64,000 bases of DNA from Podarcis erhardii (taxonomy: Eukaryota). The stretch lies in the NCBI GenBank assembly GCA_964252035.1, contig OZ176216.1; one strand, written 5' to 3'. This document shows, in pieces, positions 14,461-64,000 of the stretch. The number at the start of each line of letters is the position of its first letter. Within the stretch, counting starts at the first letter, position 1. Made by a program: the position numbers and the translations under genes. The notes below the pieces were generated by a model. The model was not told where the DNA came from. It searched no databases and saw only the letters and a list, made by a program, of their open reading frames with translations.

Positions 14461-14678
14461 TTCACCTGTCTTTGGTGTAATTTGATTGTATCCAGTGCTA
14501 GTCCTACTCAGAGTAGCCCCATTGAAAATAATGGGCATGACTAACTTGGGCCCATTAATTTCAGTTGTTATCCTCTAAGTAAAACTTGGTTATATATAAC
14601 CTGTTGGTATTTGTGCAACTTAAGATCCAACATTTAAATCTTATTCTTCTCTCTCTCTCAAACACTTCTATATTCAAG

Positions 14679-14753
14679 GTTATCCAAATTTTGTCGCGAC
14701 CTATGGCCGAGGATACCCTGGATTTGCCCCCAGTTACAGTTATCAGTTCCCAG
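14679..14753 (+). CDS. MSI2: Musashi-2 coding exon: (G)[24 protein letters not shown]
   Basis: 75 nt, acceptor ...cttctatattcaag|GT, donor CCAG|gtacgt, phase 1-1. Joins in frame to exon 287-401. Matches MSI2 [19 protein letters not shown](G)YQFP. Confidence 0.97.
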
Positions 14754-41009: not shown

Positions 41010-41069
41010 GTTTTCCGGCAGCAGCCTACGGACCAGTAGCAGCGGCAGTGGCAGCAGCAAGAGGATCAG
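41010..41069 (+). CDS. MSI2: Musashi-2 coding exon: (G)FPAAAYGPVAAAVAAARGS(G)
   Basis: 60 nt, long pyrimidine tract then ...cacggccag|GT, donor TCAG|gtaggg, phase 1-1. Matches the MSI2 Ala-rich segment. Confidence 0.96.
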
Positions 41070-41126
41070 GTAGGGGGGGCCGTGGAAGAGGCGGCTACAT
41101 GGCATACCTTCAGAATGCAGGGCCAG
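41070..41126 (+). CDS. MSI2: Alternative 5' splice-site extension of the preceding exon: GRGGRGRGGYMAYLQNAGP(G), an RGG box
   Basis: 57 nt (19 codons), open in the MSI2 frame, ending at a good distal donor CCAG|gtaaaa that keeps phase 1. Confidence 0.7.
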
Positions 41127-58590: not shown

Positions 58591-61500
58591 CTATTGTTGG
58601 GTTCTTCCAGCCTTACAGTTCTGAAGCACGCTTTGGACCCGTTTAGCTCCAACATTGTACGTTGGACCTCTACTAGCAACCCAAATTAAGCAACGCCAAA
58701 GAACAGCCGCTGGTTTTTGAAGTATAAAAGTTGGAGACGGTAACGGCAGGTTTCCCGTTGGCTTGTATGCCCAGCGCTACATGTGCTGAGTGTCGGCGCT
58801 CCTTGTTCGACAGCGTCTCCCTGATGTACACATTACTACACGCAGCTTCTGCCTCCACTTTCATCTGTATCGGCAGCATTAAATATTATTATATCATTTA
58901 CTCTCTCGAGCAGGAAAATGATGTTTGGCAGCTTGTTCTATGAATTTTTCATAAAGATAAAAAGCGGCCTAATCTTGTGAGCTTTAACTCTCAGTAGCAG
59001 TAATGGCTTTGATTTAAAGTGTTTTGTCTTAATGATAGTTATATTGAAAATTTCCTGCTGCTTTCAAGCACGCACGGTTATTATCATAAACACTGATGGT
59101 GCAAACGGCTGCCAAATTGCGTGTGGCTGCTTATGGCAAGAGAGGAGAGAAAAAGAGAGACAGGGAGCTCTGTCGACAGGTTGCTGTCAGTGAGACCTTT
59201 CAATCTTGAGAGCATTTTGAGTCTTCCCGAAGTTTTGCTTTGACCTCCAGAAGTGACTTTTGGGGTTCTCTTCACTTCTCAGCACTGTGGTCCACAGCCA
59301 GGCAAGGATAGCAAGATGAAGCAGAATCTCAGGCAGTGTTTGTACAGCTGTTCTTCTGGAAAGTACCCTTAATAAAGGAGCGTTTACACACGCTGCCATC
59401 ATTCTGTGCTAAAGTCGGAACACACAGTTGTTAAGTGTCCTCTGGAGGGCCAAGGCCCTCAATAGAGACCAATTATTTACATCCACTTGGGCAGAAATTC
59501 CCCATGTTGCACGATCCTGCAGAAAATGGCCTACAAACAGATTTAGGGTCATTTCCCAATGGCTGATGCACTTGGAAAGAGAAAGAGTTGGAAGCCCAGG
59601 GTTTGTCAGTCCTGCAAGGAACACTACACCAAGGGGAATTAGTTGGCATGGAAATTAATTCTGCATGAGTGAGTTCTGCTTTGAATGTCCTTGTGGGGGA
59701 AATCACTTCCCCTCTCATTTTTCTCGGTGTGCATTCTTAGGATGTGTGTTGAGAAACAGAAGAGAGTCAACATGCATCGTTCTGTCTGGCTTCTGGGAGA
59801 TCTGCCATACATGTCTTTGGGACCTAAATAGGTAGCTATCTGACCCTTCACAAGTTACAAAGGCACAAGGCAAGTGCCTGCTTTGCAGCTCATATTTAAG
59901 AGTACTGGTCAAACCTCAAAAAAGAGATAAACTCAGTAATACAGGTGCTTTGTGCTACGATCTAATGAGAAAGAAACTATCACAAAACTCTGTAGAGATT
60001 CATGGAAGTTTGGAGCAGAAAAGTAATTTCCTGAGAGTTATTTATTTTTCCCTGTTCAATTCTTTCCTGAATTCACCATCTGGAGGCTCTGTTTTCATAA
60101 TGGAGTGATCTATTTTGGTGATACAGTTGATGCTGAAAGTAATAAATAAATAAATAAATAAAACTTCCTTTCTGTTTTATTTAAGTTCATCTTTTCTGTC
60201 TTGCAAGTTCAGACCTGCTCTTGCCTTTTGCTGGAAGGCAATTATGAATGTGGAAGAGCAAAAGTCTTCCTGGTGCTGGGGGGCGTGGGGGCGTTCTTTG
60301 CTGTCAGCAGCCTGTGCCGTTGTCATGCAAGTGGCAAACAATCTTTCCTCCTTGTTTACCACAGATATTAAAATGTACCTCTTAGTCCACTTCGCTTGGG
60401 AGAATAAATGTGTAGACTGGTTTGTTAAAATGCATGCAGACATTTTTGCACCAACAAATTTGAGAATTGCTGTCCTTTAAAGGATGCCCATGATGTGAAA
60501 TAAGAACAAGCTTAATATCCCAAATCCCAACCCATTGTGAAGTTCACTCACTGCTTTGATCAAACTTGGCTACTAGCCATGATGGCTATGCTCTGCCTCC
60601 ACTATTTGGAGACGGTATACTTCGGAATACCAGTTGCCGTAAACCACAGGAAGGGAGAGTGTTGTTGCACTCAGCTCCTGCTTGCAGGCTCCCCATTGAA
60701 GCATCTGGTGGCCACTGGGAGCACAGGATGCTGAACAACATAGGCCATTGCCCTGATTGAGCATGGCTCTTAGTTCTTTTGAGATTCCCCCTGCTTAGCT
60801 AGGTTAAATGTGGAGTAGATCAACTATTTGTGATACTTGCCTATTAATTTTTGTTACTTATACTAGTTCTCAGTCTGAAGGTTGTGACGAGGTTTAATAG
60901 AAATCAACTTCTGTTTACTTCCTACTGGGACCCAAACCAAATGAAATCTACAAACTGCCTTACTAAAGCCATAGCTTTATATGGTATGAGACTCATTCAT
61001 CTCATCTGGGGCTCTGTGGAGTTCAACTTTTATGGCCAGGGCATTAACACAAACTCCAAACCTTGCACTATGCAGTACTAAAATGGAGGTGGGGTGGGGG
61101 TGATCTTGTAGGATCCAGTACAACAGGAAATCCAGGTAAGATCAAATAAGGAACATTTATCAATAAATACATAGATATACTTTGGTACATATAGTTATGC
61201 ACACGCACGCACACACTTTGTATACATTGCACCTGGTGGTTGGGGATTTTTTTTTTTTTTTTGGCCTTTTATTTGTTTGGGGAACGGGACCTCATGTGGA
61301 TGAACCCCTGTAGCTTTGCAAGGTTAGGCCTAGTCAGCTTGGTTCGGCTTTTCTCTACACTTCTCAGTATGTATTGCATTGGTTGTCATTTTAATCAGTT
61401 GGGGCTCTGTGTTTTCATACTTCTGTTCTTGTGCCTGTTTTGGAAAAGAATATATAGTACATCAGATGGTGAGTTTATGTTTTTTTGGTTTTTTACAAAA

Positions 61501-61719
61501 TCCAGGCTCAATGCCTCTGAACCTATGAGTCTGAGTTAAGGACCCTGGAGCATGTATGATCAAGCTGTGGTCCACTTGCTCCTCAAAATCCTACATACAT
61601 ATATTTTTGCTCTTGTTTCCGTGATTTGTAACTGTAAAAAAATAATAATAAAGTACAATTTAATATTGAAAATAAGAACCAATCCAGTATCCACAATGAT
61701 AGAGTCACTGTATCTCCAG

Positions 61720-61896
61720 GGATCCCCGATTACGGTTTCTATTCTCCGCCCGGTGACCAACGGGCTCAATTATCCTACGCGGACTATGGTTCCATGGGGC
61801 CTCGGGTGGCTCAGATGCTTCGTAGCGAGCACCCTGCTTCAGCGAGTAACTCCCCCCTTCACCACCTTCCCAGCCCGGATCAATTTAAAAGCCCAG
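61720..61896 (+). CDS. MSI2: MSI2 177-nt cassette exon: (G)IPDYGFYSPPGDQRAQLSYADYGSMGPRVAQMLRSEHPASASNSPLHHLPSPDQFKSP(G)
   Basis: tatctccag|GG ... CCCAG|gtttgt. 177 nt = 59 codons, phase 1-1, no stop. 12 CpG in 177 nt against a CpG-poor background. P/G/S/Y composition resembles the MSI2 C-terminus, and the peptide resembles long non-mammalian MSI2 isoforms as recalled. Confidence 0.8.
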
Positions 61897-63600
61897 GTTT
61901 GTATAGAATTTCATTCATTTGGGGAAGCAAAAGGAAAGAAAAATGGCAGTAGCATCACATATTTAACGATGCACAGAAAGAGATCTGCATGCTATGTATG
62001 CCACTTAATGGTTGGCAATCAAACTTCACTCCATCCTTTTACTCAGTTCTAGAATTTTTGTCGACTTTGCTTCAGTTGTGAAGGGCACAATTTTCTTTTA
62101 GGGGCTGTTCCAGATCTGATCAAATGTCAATCAAAACCTTTTGTAGAGGCATGACAGCAGAGAGTGAAGTAGCTCATTAGATGTGCAGGGCAATCTTATT
62201 CATGTCTACTTGGAAGTAAGTCTTGAGCTTACTAAAAAGTACATTCCCTCTTAAGATGGGTGTGAATCAAAATTTAGCTGTATTCTTTAAAGATTAAATA
62301 AAGGACCCTAATAATTTGTGTTGATTTTTTCAAGGTTCTTCTTAACCCCAGAGATTTTGATGAAAAAGGTTTCAAACTGCATATTCTGTTGAAAGTTATT
62401 ATTAGCTAGGTATTTGACCTGAAAGAGATGCTTAAAATAAGGTGTGTGTGCTTGTGCATGAATGATACTTCATCCTCCTGAGAATCTTTTACTTTGCTTC
62501 TTCCAGAAATTTGTTTCTGACATTTGATGAGCTCTTTCATTAGCAATCTGATCCTAAATACCTCTTCAGTGCACCTATCTTATGCTGCATAAGCTTCATG
62601 TAGTTTATCATTTCAACTGAACTGAGAACTATTGTTAGATTTAACTATGGTTTCTCCAAACAATCCAAGATCCAATTGTGTTTTCTGATCCTGACTTGTT
62701 TGGATAAAACCATTGTTGGAATTAAATGAAAATCCTGGTTTGGATGAAACAATAAACAGTGGTTGGTTGAAAATGCTTTTGATTTGTTCTTTGTGGCTAT
62801 AACAGGAAGAGAGGGGAGAGCAGACCAAGTCAGGCTCACTAAATTACAACTTAGTGTTATGTCCGAACCTGGTCATTGTTTTCTACAAGGATTCCACAAA
62901 TGTATCTATGACTTAGATTTTTAGCACACTCTTTCTTGAAACAGACAGTCTTCTCAGGGCCCCTTCACACCTGTTTTTGAATCATCACCAAATGCAGATG
63001 TGCAAATTCTGCATTCCACCTAGAATGAACTCTCGCAATGAAACCTTGGTTTACATTATGTGTTGAAAGAGTTCCTACTGGTCTTAATGTTTAAATAAGA
63101 GGAGGAATGTCTTGCTGTTGCTCATAGGCATGTGGTGGCTTCTAAATATATACTTACATAGAGTTCACCACTTGAATGAGTTAGCCATCAACTCTCCCCT
63201 CCCCACCTTGGAAAATCCTACGTAACTAGTTGGCCTAAATACCTGTACATGGGGTTGATTTTTTGACAGTCTTGTAAAATTGCTGAAGTGCTTTTGCCTA
63301 GAAAATAGAAAGCCATCATTTCCTCCTCACTTTGTGAATCCACCTCAGTATAATGCGCCATATGCTAAGGCAGATGTCATAATGAATCATGGCTGGAAAT
63401 AACTCCCCATTTTATCAAAGAGAGTTTATCTTTCAGTGGTGACCTTTCTTGTCCAGGACTGGAGTAATTTGTGTGCAGGCTTTGTGTTAACATGCCAGTT
63501 CATAGGACAAAGTGCCTGATAAGCCAGCCTTAGCTCTCACTTGTCAGCAGTGCCAGCAGAATCATGCTCTGGGCTTTTGCCACACAAGCACTCCTTAAGG

Positions 63601-63737
63601 CAGCCTTCCCCAACCTGGTGCCCTCCATATGTTTTTGACAACAGCTCCCATCAGCCCCAGTCAGCACAGTCATGGGGCTTGTGGCTGATCAAAGCCGTAG
63701 TCAAAAACATATGGAGGGCACCAAATTGGGGGAGGTG
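63601..63737. mobile_element. Palindromic hAT-like MITE
   Basis: cagccttccccaacctggtgccctcca...tggagggcaccaaattggggga, with degenerate TIRs. Confidence 0.7.
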
Positions 63738-64000
63738 CTTTAAGATTTCACCATTTGGGCTCCTCACCTTGCTTCCAAATCATGCAGTAAGCAGAATAGT
63801 AGATTCCCCTTTGTCTCAGGAGAGAAAGTCCTGTTTCCTATTTGCATATGTTAATTCATCAAATCATGAATTAAAAATTGACCAGCATTGAGGCGCACCT
63901 AAAACTGTTTTAGATGCAATAGTTTAAAATCAGCAAGTAGGAACAATCAAGCCAGGATCAAAACAAATTGTGGGAGTAGTTTGCCTGGTATTTTGGATAG

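What the first reader, a model, noticed from the sequence alone, without database searches (positions are those of the whole stretch)
61720..61991. Hidden 59-codon cassette exon with four Ser-Pro sites, absent from canonical mammalian MSI2
It is missed by the ORF track, which reports a different frame. The exon is in frame, CpG-rich and has a weak pyrimidine tract typical of regulated exons, with TGCATG about 90 nt downstream (61986-61991; downstream RBFOX sites are established inclusion enhancers). It adds a Tyr/Gly/Pro low-complexity segment with YSPP, NSPL, PSPD and KSPG, potential MAPK/CDK sites. Musashi activity is known to be controlled by proline-directed phosphorylation. Together with the RGG extension it would add 78 aa of Arg- and Tyr-containing disordered sequence, which could change condensate behaviour (inference). 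Whether mammals lost or silenced it is worth testing.
Basis: partly seen in the sequence, partly recalled or inferred. Interest (0 to 1): 0.7.

Follow-up and report, generated by a model that had tools for sequence, protein, structure and literature searches.

The report
Known conserved alternative MSI2 exon
The 177-base stretch is a real, very old coding exon of the Musashi-2 gene; it is already in gene models of fish, sharks, frogs and turtles and in the frog cDNA used in published work, so it is genuine but not new.

Summary
Window 61720-61896 is a 177-nt open exon bounded by AG and GT, in phase with the upstream MSI2 exon (41010-41069/41126). It has four Ser-Pro sites and is CpG-rich (observed/expected 0.85, against 0.25 for the window). 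TGCATG lies 90 nt downstream.

It is not hidden from science.
- A library-wide protein search found 39 relatives; all 14 named or fetched are MSI2 pieces or isoforms.
- 224 teleost MSI2 isoforms carry it. So do models from sharks, bichir, paddlefish, bowfin, eel, frogs, a salamander and two sea turtles.
- Xenopus gene models that contain it reproduce the published Xenopus Msi2 numbering exactly (406 aa, S356/S381, against S278/S303 in mammals). The cDNA used in functional papers therefore includes this exon.

Selection and flanks:
- dN/dS is 0.07-0.19.
- The weak donor CAG|GTTTGT is invariant from shark to lizard.
- TGCATG sits at +80 to +93 in five of eight other loci, and at +188 to +204 in three.
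- Two Ser-Pro sites (NSPL, PSPD) are nearly invariant.

RNA evidence in this lizard is thin: 2-3 reads in one run, plus contig borders in a relative. I could not test mammals or birds. The scan had not noted this exon on other DNA.

Verdict: real, ordinary, already annotated; its function is unstudied.

The parts
61720..61896 (+). 177-nt alternative coding exon of MSI2 (phase 1-1). It encodes 58 whole codons plus two split Gly codons.
   Evidence: Sequence and translation. Orthologous peptide in MSI2 models of many vertebrates. dN/dS 0.07-0.19. The same borders occur in 8 other loci.
61695..61719 (+). Conserved intronic acceptor region AATGATAGAGTCACTGTATCTCCAG, with a purine-interrupted (weak) pyrimidine tract.
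   Evidence: Identical in the green turtle and in a second squamate contig. AATGATGG.GTC and ACTGTATCTCCCAG are kept in paddlefish and a teleost-like locus. Pyrimidines are 61% of -20..-3.
61897..61902 (+). Donor GTTTGT. It departs from the GTRAGT consensus at +3 and +4.
   Evidence: CAG|GTTTGT is invariant in all nine loci, from shark to lizard.
61986..61991 (+). TGCATG (RBFOX-type motif) 90 nt downstream of the donor.
   Evidence: TGCATG is at +81 (L001), +80 (turtle), +82 (frog L002) and +93 (paddlefish). It is at +188/+222 (frog L004), +199 (L006) and +204 (shark). In the window the chance of one in a 16-nt span is about 0.009, and in 250 nt about 0.14.
41010..41069 (+). Upstream MSI2 exon (G)FPAAAYGPVAAAVAAARGS(G), the usual splice partner.
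   Evidence: tblastn with eel MSI2 X1. Tetrapod models join ...AAARGS-G-IPDYG.
41070..41126 (+). Optional 57-nt extension from a downstream donor, encoding RGGRGRGGYMAYLQNAGP(G). It is in the same phase.
   Evidence: Homologous extensions precede this exon in eel, shark, bichir, bowfin and paddlefish models.

Best explanation
This is the lizard orthologue of an ancient alternative coding exon of Musashi-2 (MSI2). The exon lies between the exon that ends ...AAARGS and the exon that carries the two known regulatory Ser-Pro sites.

Shown:
- It is a conserved protein-coding exon under purifying selection.
- Its splice signals are weak but invariant, and its intron flanks are conserved.
- Other vertebrates splice it into MSI2 mRNAs.

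Inferred:
- Inclusion inserts about 59 residues of unfolded, Tyr/Ser/Pro-rich sequence into the C-terminal disordered region. That sequence carries conserved short motifs: PDYGFY, S(F/Y)ADYG, AQML-SEH, NSPL and SPDQFK.
- Inclusion is regulated, probably enhanced by RBFOX proteins binding the conserved downstream UGCAUG.
- The two nearly invariant Ser-Pro sites may be further targets of proline-directed kinases. The insert may alter localisation or translational activity, as the neighbouring 18-residue insert does in human MSI2.
For: - Position, phase and borders.
- Library-wide search: 39 relatives. All 14 named or fetched are MSI2 pieces, including Ascaphus, Mustelus and Anguilla isoform X1.
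- 224 teleost MSI2/msi2a/msi2b isoforms carry it. So do frogs, Pleurodeles, Polypterus, Polyodon, Amia, Heptranchias, Chelonia and Caretta.
- Xenopus models P0187/P0189 plus 104 N-terminal residues give 406 aa and S356/S381. That equals the published Xenopus Msi2 numbering, against S278/S303 in mammals (PMC5599597).
- dN/dS is 0.07-0.19, and changes are mostly at third codon positions.
- Over 57 distinct exon peptides, S44-P45 is kept in 54 and S51-P52 in at least 55.
- The donor is invariant, the acceptor region is conserved, and TGCATG sits at +80..+93 in five of eight other loci.
- Eel isoforms exist with and without the exon, so it is alternative there.
- The AlphaFold model of an exon-containing isoform has pLDDT 22-29 across the whole C-terminal half.
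- In a related species' run, a 181-nt contig covers exactly 61717-61897 and overlaps the intron contig by k-1 = 30 nt. That is the border pattern expected if a spliced form joined from the ...GATCAG donor is present.
- A small insert at the same junction switches human MSI2 to the nucleus (PMC13228403).
Against: - RNA evidence in this species is thin. One bulk RNA run had no reads on the exon and the other had about 2-3. No junction or loose end reached the listing threshold.
- Only 12% of each run was read, and the tissues are unknown.
- I could not measure inclusion against constitutive exons, so 'cassette' status in the lizard is inferred from other species.
- RBFOX dependence, phosphorylation and any effect on localisation or condensates are untested.
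- In Xenopus, S356A/S381A abolishes function although the exon is intact (PMC5599597). The exon's own sites therefore cannot replace the known ones.
- The structure model is poor overall (mean pLDDT 40, shallow alignment), so it is weak support for disorder.
Confidence: 0.85

Rival explanations
1. The exon is constitutive in squamates rather than a regulated cassette. It would then be simply part of the normal lizard MSI2 protein, as it is in the standard Xenopus cDNA.
For: Every frog, salamander and turtle model retrieved contains it, though the search selected for it. The cloned Xenopus Msi2 contains it.
Against: - The donor and pyrimidine tract are weak and the intron flanks are conserved, as is typical of regulated exons.
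- Eel isoform X14 lacks the exon while X1 has it.
- One lizard RNA run showed no reads on it.
Confidence: 0.15
2. The exon mainly serves C-terminally truncated MSI2 isoforms. In these it is followed by an alternative last exon, so the protein lacks the S278/S303-type regulatory sites, like human variant 2.
For: Many models end soon after the exon in another last exon. Examples are Bombina X2 (353 aa), several frog 351-aa forms, Heptranchias X13 (360 aa), Caretta (368 aa) and Pleurodeles X12 (341 aa). Truncated forms that evade phosphorylation are a known theme (PMC5599597).
Against: - Full-length forms ending ...NGYH with the exon are equally annotated: Xenopus, Hyperolius, Ranitomeya, eel X1 and many teleosts.
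- My length limit of 360 aa or less favoured truncated forms.
- No matching terminal exon was found in window 61897-64000.
- The Caretta tail has a stop in Chelonia.
Confidence: 0.15
3. This is not an exon. It is a chance open frame, or a conserved non-coding element, inside an MSI2 intron.
For: RNA support in this species is very low. No Pfam family covers the segment.
Against: - Third-position-biased divergence with dN/dS 0.07-0.19 out to a shark.
- Exact AG/GT borders in nine loci.
- Presence inside spliced MSI2 protein models of hundreds of species and in the Xenopus cDNA numbering.
Confidence: 0.01

Closest known systems
Xenopus laevis/tropicalis Msi2 (xrp1; 406 aa), the form used in MacNicol et al. 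2017 (PMC5599597)
   Same: It carries the orthologous exon between ...AAARGS and VLNSY.../GTNP..., about 86% identical over 58 residues. NSPL and PSPD are kept.
   Different: The Xenopus form uses the short upstream donor and the long acceptor of the next exon. Its 78 extra residues are therefore 59 + 18 + 1, not 59 + 19. The paper never discusses the exon itself.
RefSeq, Ensembl and GenBank MSI2/msi2a/msi2b long isoforms of fish, sharks, amphibians and sea turtles (e.g. Anguilla rostrata X1 XP_064206069.1, Caretta caretta CAM2104061.1)
   Same: The exon, position, phase and donor are the same. Identity is 66-95%.
   Different: Ray-finned fishes have one extra codon (180 nt). Eel also uses an internal donor after AQMLH that the lizard lacks.
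Human MSI2-324 18-residue insert from the alternative 3' acceptor of exon 12 (PMC13228403)
   Same: It is a small alternatively spliced insert at the same exon-11/exon-12 junction of the disordered C-terminal region.
   Different: It is a different sequence made by a different mechanism (alternative acceptor, not a separate exon). Its nuclear-localising effect is shown for human cells only and cannot be carried over without a test.
RBFOX-enhanced cassette exons with a downstream (U)GCAUG
   Same: TGCATG lies within about 100 nt downstream and is conserved across distant vertebrates. The splice sites are weak and the flanks are conserved.
   Different: There is no binding, knock-down or tissue-specificity evidence here.

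Membership tests
Orthologue of the annotated MSI2 alternative exon (Xenopus Msi2 406 aa, teleost long isoforms) | Lies in MSI2 between the ...AAARGS exon and the exon encoding (VLNSY...)G-x-NP-x-RPGGFPGANSPGP | tested here: met
   Upstream MSI2 exons were mapped in the window at about 287-403, 14678-14753 and 41010-41069. The turtle locus has the same order, with the next exon 11 kb downstream. The lizard's next exon lies beyond the window.
Orthologue of the annotated MSI2 alternative exon (Xenopus Msi2 406 aa, teleost long isoforms) | AG/GT borders and a length divisible by three, in phase 1 | tested here: met
   The exon is 177 nt in tetrapods and the shark, and 180 nt in paddlefish and a teleost-like locus.
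Orthologue of the annotated MSI2 alternative exon (Xenopus Msi2 406 aa, teleost long isoforms) | Peptide homology to the exon in spliced MSI2 proteins | tested here: met
   E-values run from 4.5e-29 to 1e-4 against 39 representatives. Named MSI2 isoforms carry it.
Orthologue of the annotated MSI2 alternative exon (Xenopus Msi2 406 aa, teleost long isoforms) | Coding-type (purifying) selection | tested here: met
   dN/dS is 0.07-0.19. Window against shark: 10, 7 and 30 differences at codon positions 1, 2 and 3.
Orthologue of the annotated MSI2 alternative exon (Xenopus Msi2 406 aa, teleost long isoforms) | Spliced into mRNA in this species | tested here: inconclusive
   One of two bulk RNA runs gave 2-3 reads on the exon, and no listed junctions. 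In a related species a contig ends exactly at both exon borders.
RBFOX-activated cassette exon | (U)GCAUG within about 300 nt downstream, conserved | tested here: met
   +90 in the window; +80 to +93 in four further distant loci; +188 to +204 in three others.
RBFOX-activated cassette exon | Inclusion depends on RBFOX, or is specific to neurons or muscle | not testable with these tools
   No CLIP, knock-down or tissue-resolved data were available.
Proline-directed regulatory phosphorylation of Musashi (as at S278/S303) | Conserved Ser/Thr-Pro motifs | tested here: met
   S44-P45 is kept in 54 of 57 distinct peptides. At the second site S51 is kept in 55 and P52 in 56. The first site is S/T-P at positions 9-10 in 33 of 57. 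The last site has Ser in 37 of 57.
Proline-directed regulatory phosphorylation of Musashi (as at S278/S303) | Serines are phosphorylated and needed for function | not testable with these tools
   PMC5599597 reports further, unmapped phosphorylation of Xenopus Msi2. Mouse Msi2, which lacks the exon, also shows shifted forms, and the S356A/S381A mutant is inactive despite an intact exon.
Disordered low-complexity (condensate-prone) segment | No stable fold; Tyr/Gly/Ser/Pro-rich | tested here: inconclusive
   Of 58 residues, P 9, S 9, Y 4 and G 4. pLDDT is 22-29, with one low-confidence helix over FADYGS..AQMLH. The model is poor overall. There is no Pfam match.

The most novel reading that the evidence does not exclude
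The exon is a module at least as old as jawed vertebrates that mammals, and perhaps birds, have lost or silenced. Its two invariant Ser-Pro sites would be unrecognised kinase inputs, and its inclusion would be set by RBFOX. Non-mammalian Musashi-2 would then have a regulatory layer absent from the mammalian protein on which nearly all functional work is based. This might underlie the faster oocyte rescue by Xenopus than by mouse Msi2 reported in PMC5599597.
Probability: 0.25. Interest if true: 0.5.

Novelty: already known. Interest (0 to 1): 0.22.

Why it matters
The result confirms that a raw-sequence reader can find a real exon that an ORF list misses, but the exon is already in public gene models and in a long-used Xenopus cDNA.

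Two questions remain open. No paper I could find studies this 59-residue insert, although work on human MSI2 shows that a small insert at the same junction changes localisation and translational activity. And it is unknown whether mammals lack the exon altogether.

Two practical points follow. Xenopus Msi2 results were obtained with a protein that contains this segment, so they may not transfer one-to-one to the mammalian 328-residue form. The two invariant Ser-Pro sites are obvious candidates for mutagenesis.

Tried and rejected
- The word-index protein search with the 58-residue peptide found nothing. This is a length-window artefact, not absence.
- Pfam has no family for the segment.
- The papers by Good et al. 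1993 (PMC309235) and Hochgreb-Hagele et al. 2014 (PMC3901373) are not held. The Xenopus link therefore rests on gene models plus the residue numbering in PMC5599597. Searches for xrp1 and for Msi2 with Rbfox gave nothing specific.
- The Caretta locus gave no DNA because the gene is too long. Ascaphus P0002 is not on record.
- I looked in window 61897-64000 for the alternative terminal exons seen in frog, shark, turtle and salamander models. There was no convincing match. The conserved block at 63332-63562 is not the Caretta tail.
- I first read the 78-residue Xenopus offset as RGG extension plus exon. The gene models show it is exon + VLNSY extension + one Ala.
- I did not build or search a joined (spliced) lizard protein; exons were searched one by one by reference.
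- I did not look for a remnant in the human intron, and I did not scan metagenome contigs for host DNA, so as not to handle contigs that might be human.

Full report
**What is there.** Window 61720-61896 is a 177-nt stretch bounded by ...ctccAG| and |GTTTGT. Read two bases in, it is open for 58 codons: IPDYGFYSPPGDQRAQLSYADYGSMGPRVAQMLRSEHPASASNSPLHHLPSPDQFKSP.

The upstream MSI2 exon, (G)FPAAAYGPVAAAVAAARGS(G), ends at 41069 with one leftover base. So does its 57-nt extension to the donor at 41126, RGGRGRGGYMAYLQNAGP(G). The candidate exon supplies the two missing bases and again leaves one. It is therefore frame-preserving with either donor.

- The exon has 12 CpG, GC 0.58 and CpG observed/expected 0.85, against 0.25 for the window.
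- Pyrimidines make up 61% of -20..-3, against 78% at the 41010 acceptor.
- TGCATG is at 61986-61991, which is +90.
- All four Ser-Pro sites are present.

**The gene.** tblastn with a full-length eel MSI2 (P0041) places MSI2 exons at about 287-403, 14678-14753, 41010-41126 and 61720-61896. Earlier notes of this scan describe a 24-nt MSI2 microexon near 38.6 kb and call the genome a wall lizard. I did not test the species. However, the peptide shares two derived residues (P9, P38) with a second reptile contig (L001) that turtles and frogs lack.

**Is it known?** The word-index search with the short peptide returned nothing, because of its length window. The claim concerns absence from known proteins, so I ran the library-wide phmmer search. 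It gave 39 hits, 31 of them below 1e-10.

I fetched 14 of these and named 10. All are MSI2 pieces or isoforms, and in them the segment is spliced between ...AAARGS(G) and (VLNSY...)G-x-NP-x-RPGGFPGANSPGP. They include Ascaphus truei, Mustelus asterias, Anguilla rostrata isoforms X1-X14 and several teleosts.

A region search with eel X1 found 224 proteins. All 120 listed are teleosts, and nearly all are named Musashi homolog 2, 2a or 2b. A region search with the frog fragment added:
- frogs: Hyperolius, Bombina, Ranitomeya, Mixophyes, Leptodactylus, Phyllobates, Hyla, Eleutherodactylus, and Xenopus tropicalis and laevis;
- the salamander Pleurodeles;
- other fishes and a shark: Polypterus, Polyodon, Amia and Heptranchias;
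- two sea turtles, Chelonia mydas and Caretta caretta.

**Link to published work.** The Xenopus models P0187 and P0189 start at the Met that is residue 105 of the full protein. Adding 104 residues puts the two regulatory serines at 356 and 381 and the length at 406. MacNicol et al. 2017 (PMC5599597) use exactly S356/S381 for Xenopus Msi2 and equate them with S278/S303 of mouse and human Msi2.

The Xenopus cDNA used in that work came from Good et al. 1993, according to the paper's methods. It therefore contains this exon. The 78-residue offset is 59 (this exon) + 18 (the VLNSY... acceptor extension) + 1 extra Ala. It does not come from the RGG extension.

**Selection.** I fetched DNA for eight other loci:
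- L001, a second squamate-like contig;
- L007, the green turtle;
- L002, L004 and L005, three frog-like contigs;
- L008, paddlefish;
- L006, a teleost-like locus;
- L003, the shark Mustelus.

All have AG at the acceptor and the identical donor CAG|GTTTGT. Length is 177 nt, or 180 nt in the two ray-finned fishes. Among the four loci compared codon by codon (window, L001, L002 and the shark L003), dN/dS is 0.07-0.19. Differences are concentrated at third positions, for example 10/7/30 against the shark.

Over 57 distinct exon peptides from 186 proteins, these are invariant or nearly so: PDYGFY, D12, R14, S18, ADY, G26, QML, SEH, NSP, H48, SPD and FK. S44-P45 is kept in 54 of 57. At the next site S51 is kept in 55 and P52 in 56. 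The first site is S/T-P in 33 of 57 (the lizard has SPP). The last has Ser in 37 of 57.

**Flanks.** The window aligns with the turtle from 84 nt upstream to 176 nt downstream of the exon, at 81% identity. The acceptor region AATGATAGAGTCACTGTATCTCCAG is identical in the turtle and recognisable in paddlefish and the teleost-like locus.

Positions of TGCATG downstream of the donor:

| Locus | Offset |
|---|---|
| Window | +90 |
| L001 | +81 |
| Turtle (L007) | +80 |
| Frog (L002) | +82 |
| Paddlefish (L008) | +93 |
| Second frog (L004) | +188 and +222 |
| Teleost-like (L006) | +199 |
| Shark (L003) | +204 |

In the window the motif occurs 38 times in 64 kb. The chance of one in a given 16-nt span is therefore about 0.009.

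A weak but invariant donor, a weak tract, conserved flanks and a conserved UGCAUG are the usual marks of a regulated exon. RBFOX involvement is an inference.

**Is it alternative?** In the eel, isoform X14 lacks the exon, X1, X2 and X12 have all of it, and X5 and X8 use an internal donor.

In tetrapod models the exon always follows the short donor (AAARGS-G-IPDYG). The RGG-type extension plus exon is seen only in eel, sharks, bichir, bowfin and paddlefish. My tetrapod search was limited to proteins of 360 residues or fewer, so this does not exclude joint use.

Many frog, shark, salamander and turtle models end soon after the exon in another last exon. They therefore lack the S278/S303-type sites.

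**RNA in this genome.** One call laid four runs on 59000-64000.
- Bulk RNA run X23 had no reads on the exon.
- Run X24 had a mean depth of 1.68 over 61672-61838 and 0.23 over 61839-62005, about 2-3 reads. Their direction fits a + strand RNA in a standard stranded library. The neighbouring intron bins were empty.
- No junction or loose end reached the listing threshold.
- Only 12% of each run was read, and the tissues are unknown.

In run X12, from a related species (kind uncertain), a 181-nt contig with no mismatch covers exactly 61717-61897. It overlaps the intron contig 61621-61746 by 30 nt, which is k-1 for a 31-mer graph. That is what a graph branch at the exon border gives. The three shared bases CAG fit a junction from ...GATCAG (41069) rather than ...GGCCAG (41126). 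This is indirect evidence. Expression in the lizard itself remains weakly shown.

**Structure.** An AlphaFold model of eel X1, built with a 33-sequence alignment, gives the two RRMs moderate confidence. The whole C-terminal half has pLDDT 22-29, with one low-confidence helix over FADYGS..AQMLH. Pfam has no family for the segment. This is consistent with a disordered segment that carries short conserved motifs. The model is poor overall (mean pLDDT 40).

**Function.** Nothing I found studies this exon. Two published facts frame it. In human MSI2, the 18-residue insert at the same exon-11/12 junction is needed for nuclear localisation and abolishes translational activation (PMC13228403). In Xenopus oocytes, Msi2 carries further unmapped phosphorylation; the S356A/S381A mutant is inactive although this exon is intact; mouse Msi2 rescues maturation more slowly than the Xenopus protein; and mouse Msi2 also shows shifted forms (PMC5599597).

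The exon's Ser-Pro sites therefore cannot replace the known sites. A modulatory role is possible but untested.

**Mammals and birds.** The forms described in the papers I read lack the exon: human 328 and 324 aa, and the mouse form numbered S278/S303. None of the 39 library representatives, nor the hits, is mammalian or avian. The 29 representatives I did not name all look teleost or shark by sequence.

Clustering at 50% identity and the length limit make this a weak negative. I had no mammalian or avian genome to search. I did not look in human sequence, and I avoided metagenome scans that might return human contigs.

I did not build or search a joined spliced model of the lizard protein; each exon was searched by reference.

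**Verdict.** This is a real, ancient, purifying-selected alternative exon of MSI2. Its regulation and function, and its fate in mammals, are open but ordinary questions.

Noticed in passing
window 63332-63562 and 59024-59152: Two intronic blocks align to the green-turtle MSI2 intron (L007 78335-78568 and 74615-74743) at 83-85% identity. They match none of the alternative MSI2 tails I tested, so they are conserved non-coding elements of unknown role.
   Followed up: partly
window 60503-60836 and 63509-63675: These are repeat copies (SINE-like) with very high depth in the RNA runs and in contigs. There are many loose ends, and opposite-strand joints at 63633/63665.
   Followed up: no
window 61717-61897 (run X12, related species): A 181-nt contig with no mismatch ends exactly at both exon borders. 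It overlaps the intron contig by 30 nt (k-1). This suggests the run holds both spliced and unspliced forms, with the spliced form joined from the 41069 donor.
   Followed up: partly
P0167, P0173, P0177, P0188 (Bombina, Heptranchias, Caretta, Pleurodeles models): Many non-mammalian MSI2 models end just after this exon in an alternative last exon. The frog and shark tails resemble each other (EF[VI]...QD.A.FL). They lack the two known regulatory serines, like human variant 2. No counterpart was found in the window.
   Followed up: partly
P0039 and P0044 (Anguilla rostrata X5, X8); window about 61817-61825: The eel uses an internal donor inside the exon after ...AQMLH, keeping only the first 35 residues. 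The lizard has no GT at the matching position.
   Followed up: partly
L007 82089-82193 (Chelonia mydas): The terminal exon used in the Caretta caretta model (DWNSIERCGSS...) has an in-frame stop in the green turtle. That tail may therefore be a prediction artefact or species-specific. The Chelonia model EMP37695.1 also uses only part of the 177-nt exon.
   Followed up: partly
window 41070-41126: The RGG-type extension from the downstream donor is in phase. It has counterparts in eel, shark, bichir, bowfin and paddlefish MSI2 models, but in none of the tetrapod models retrieved.
   Followed up: partly
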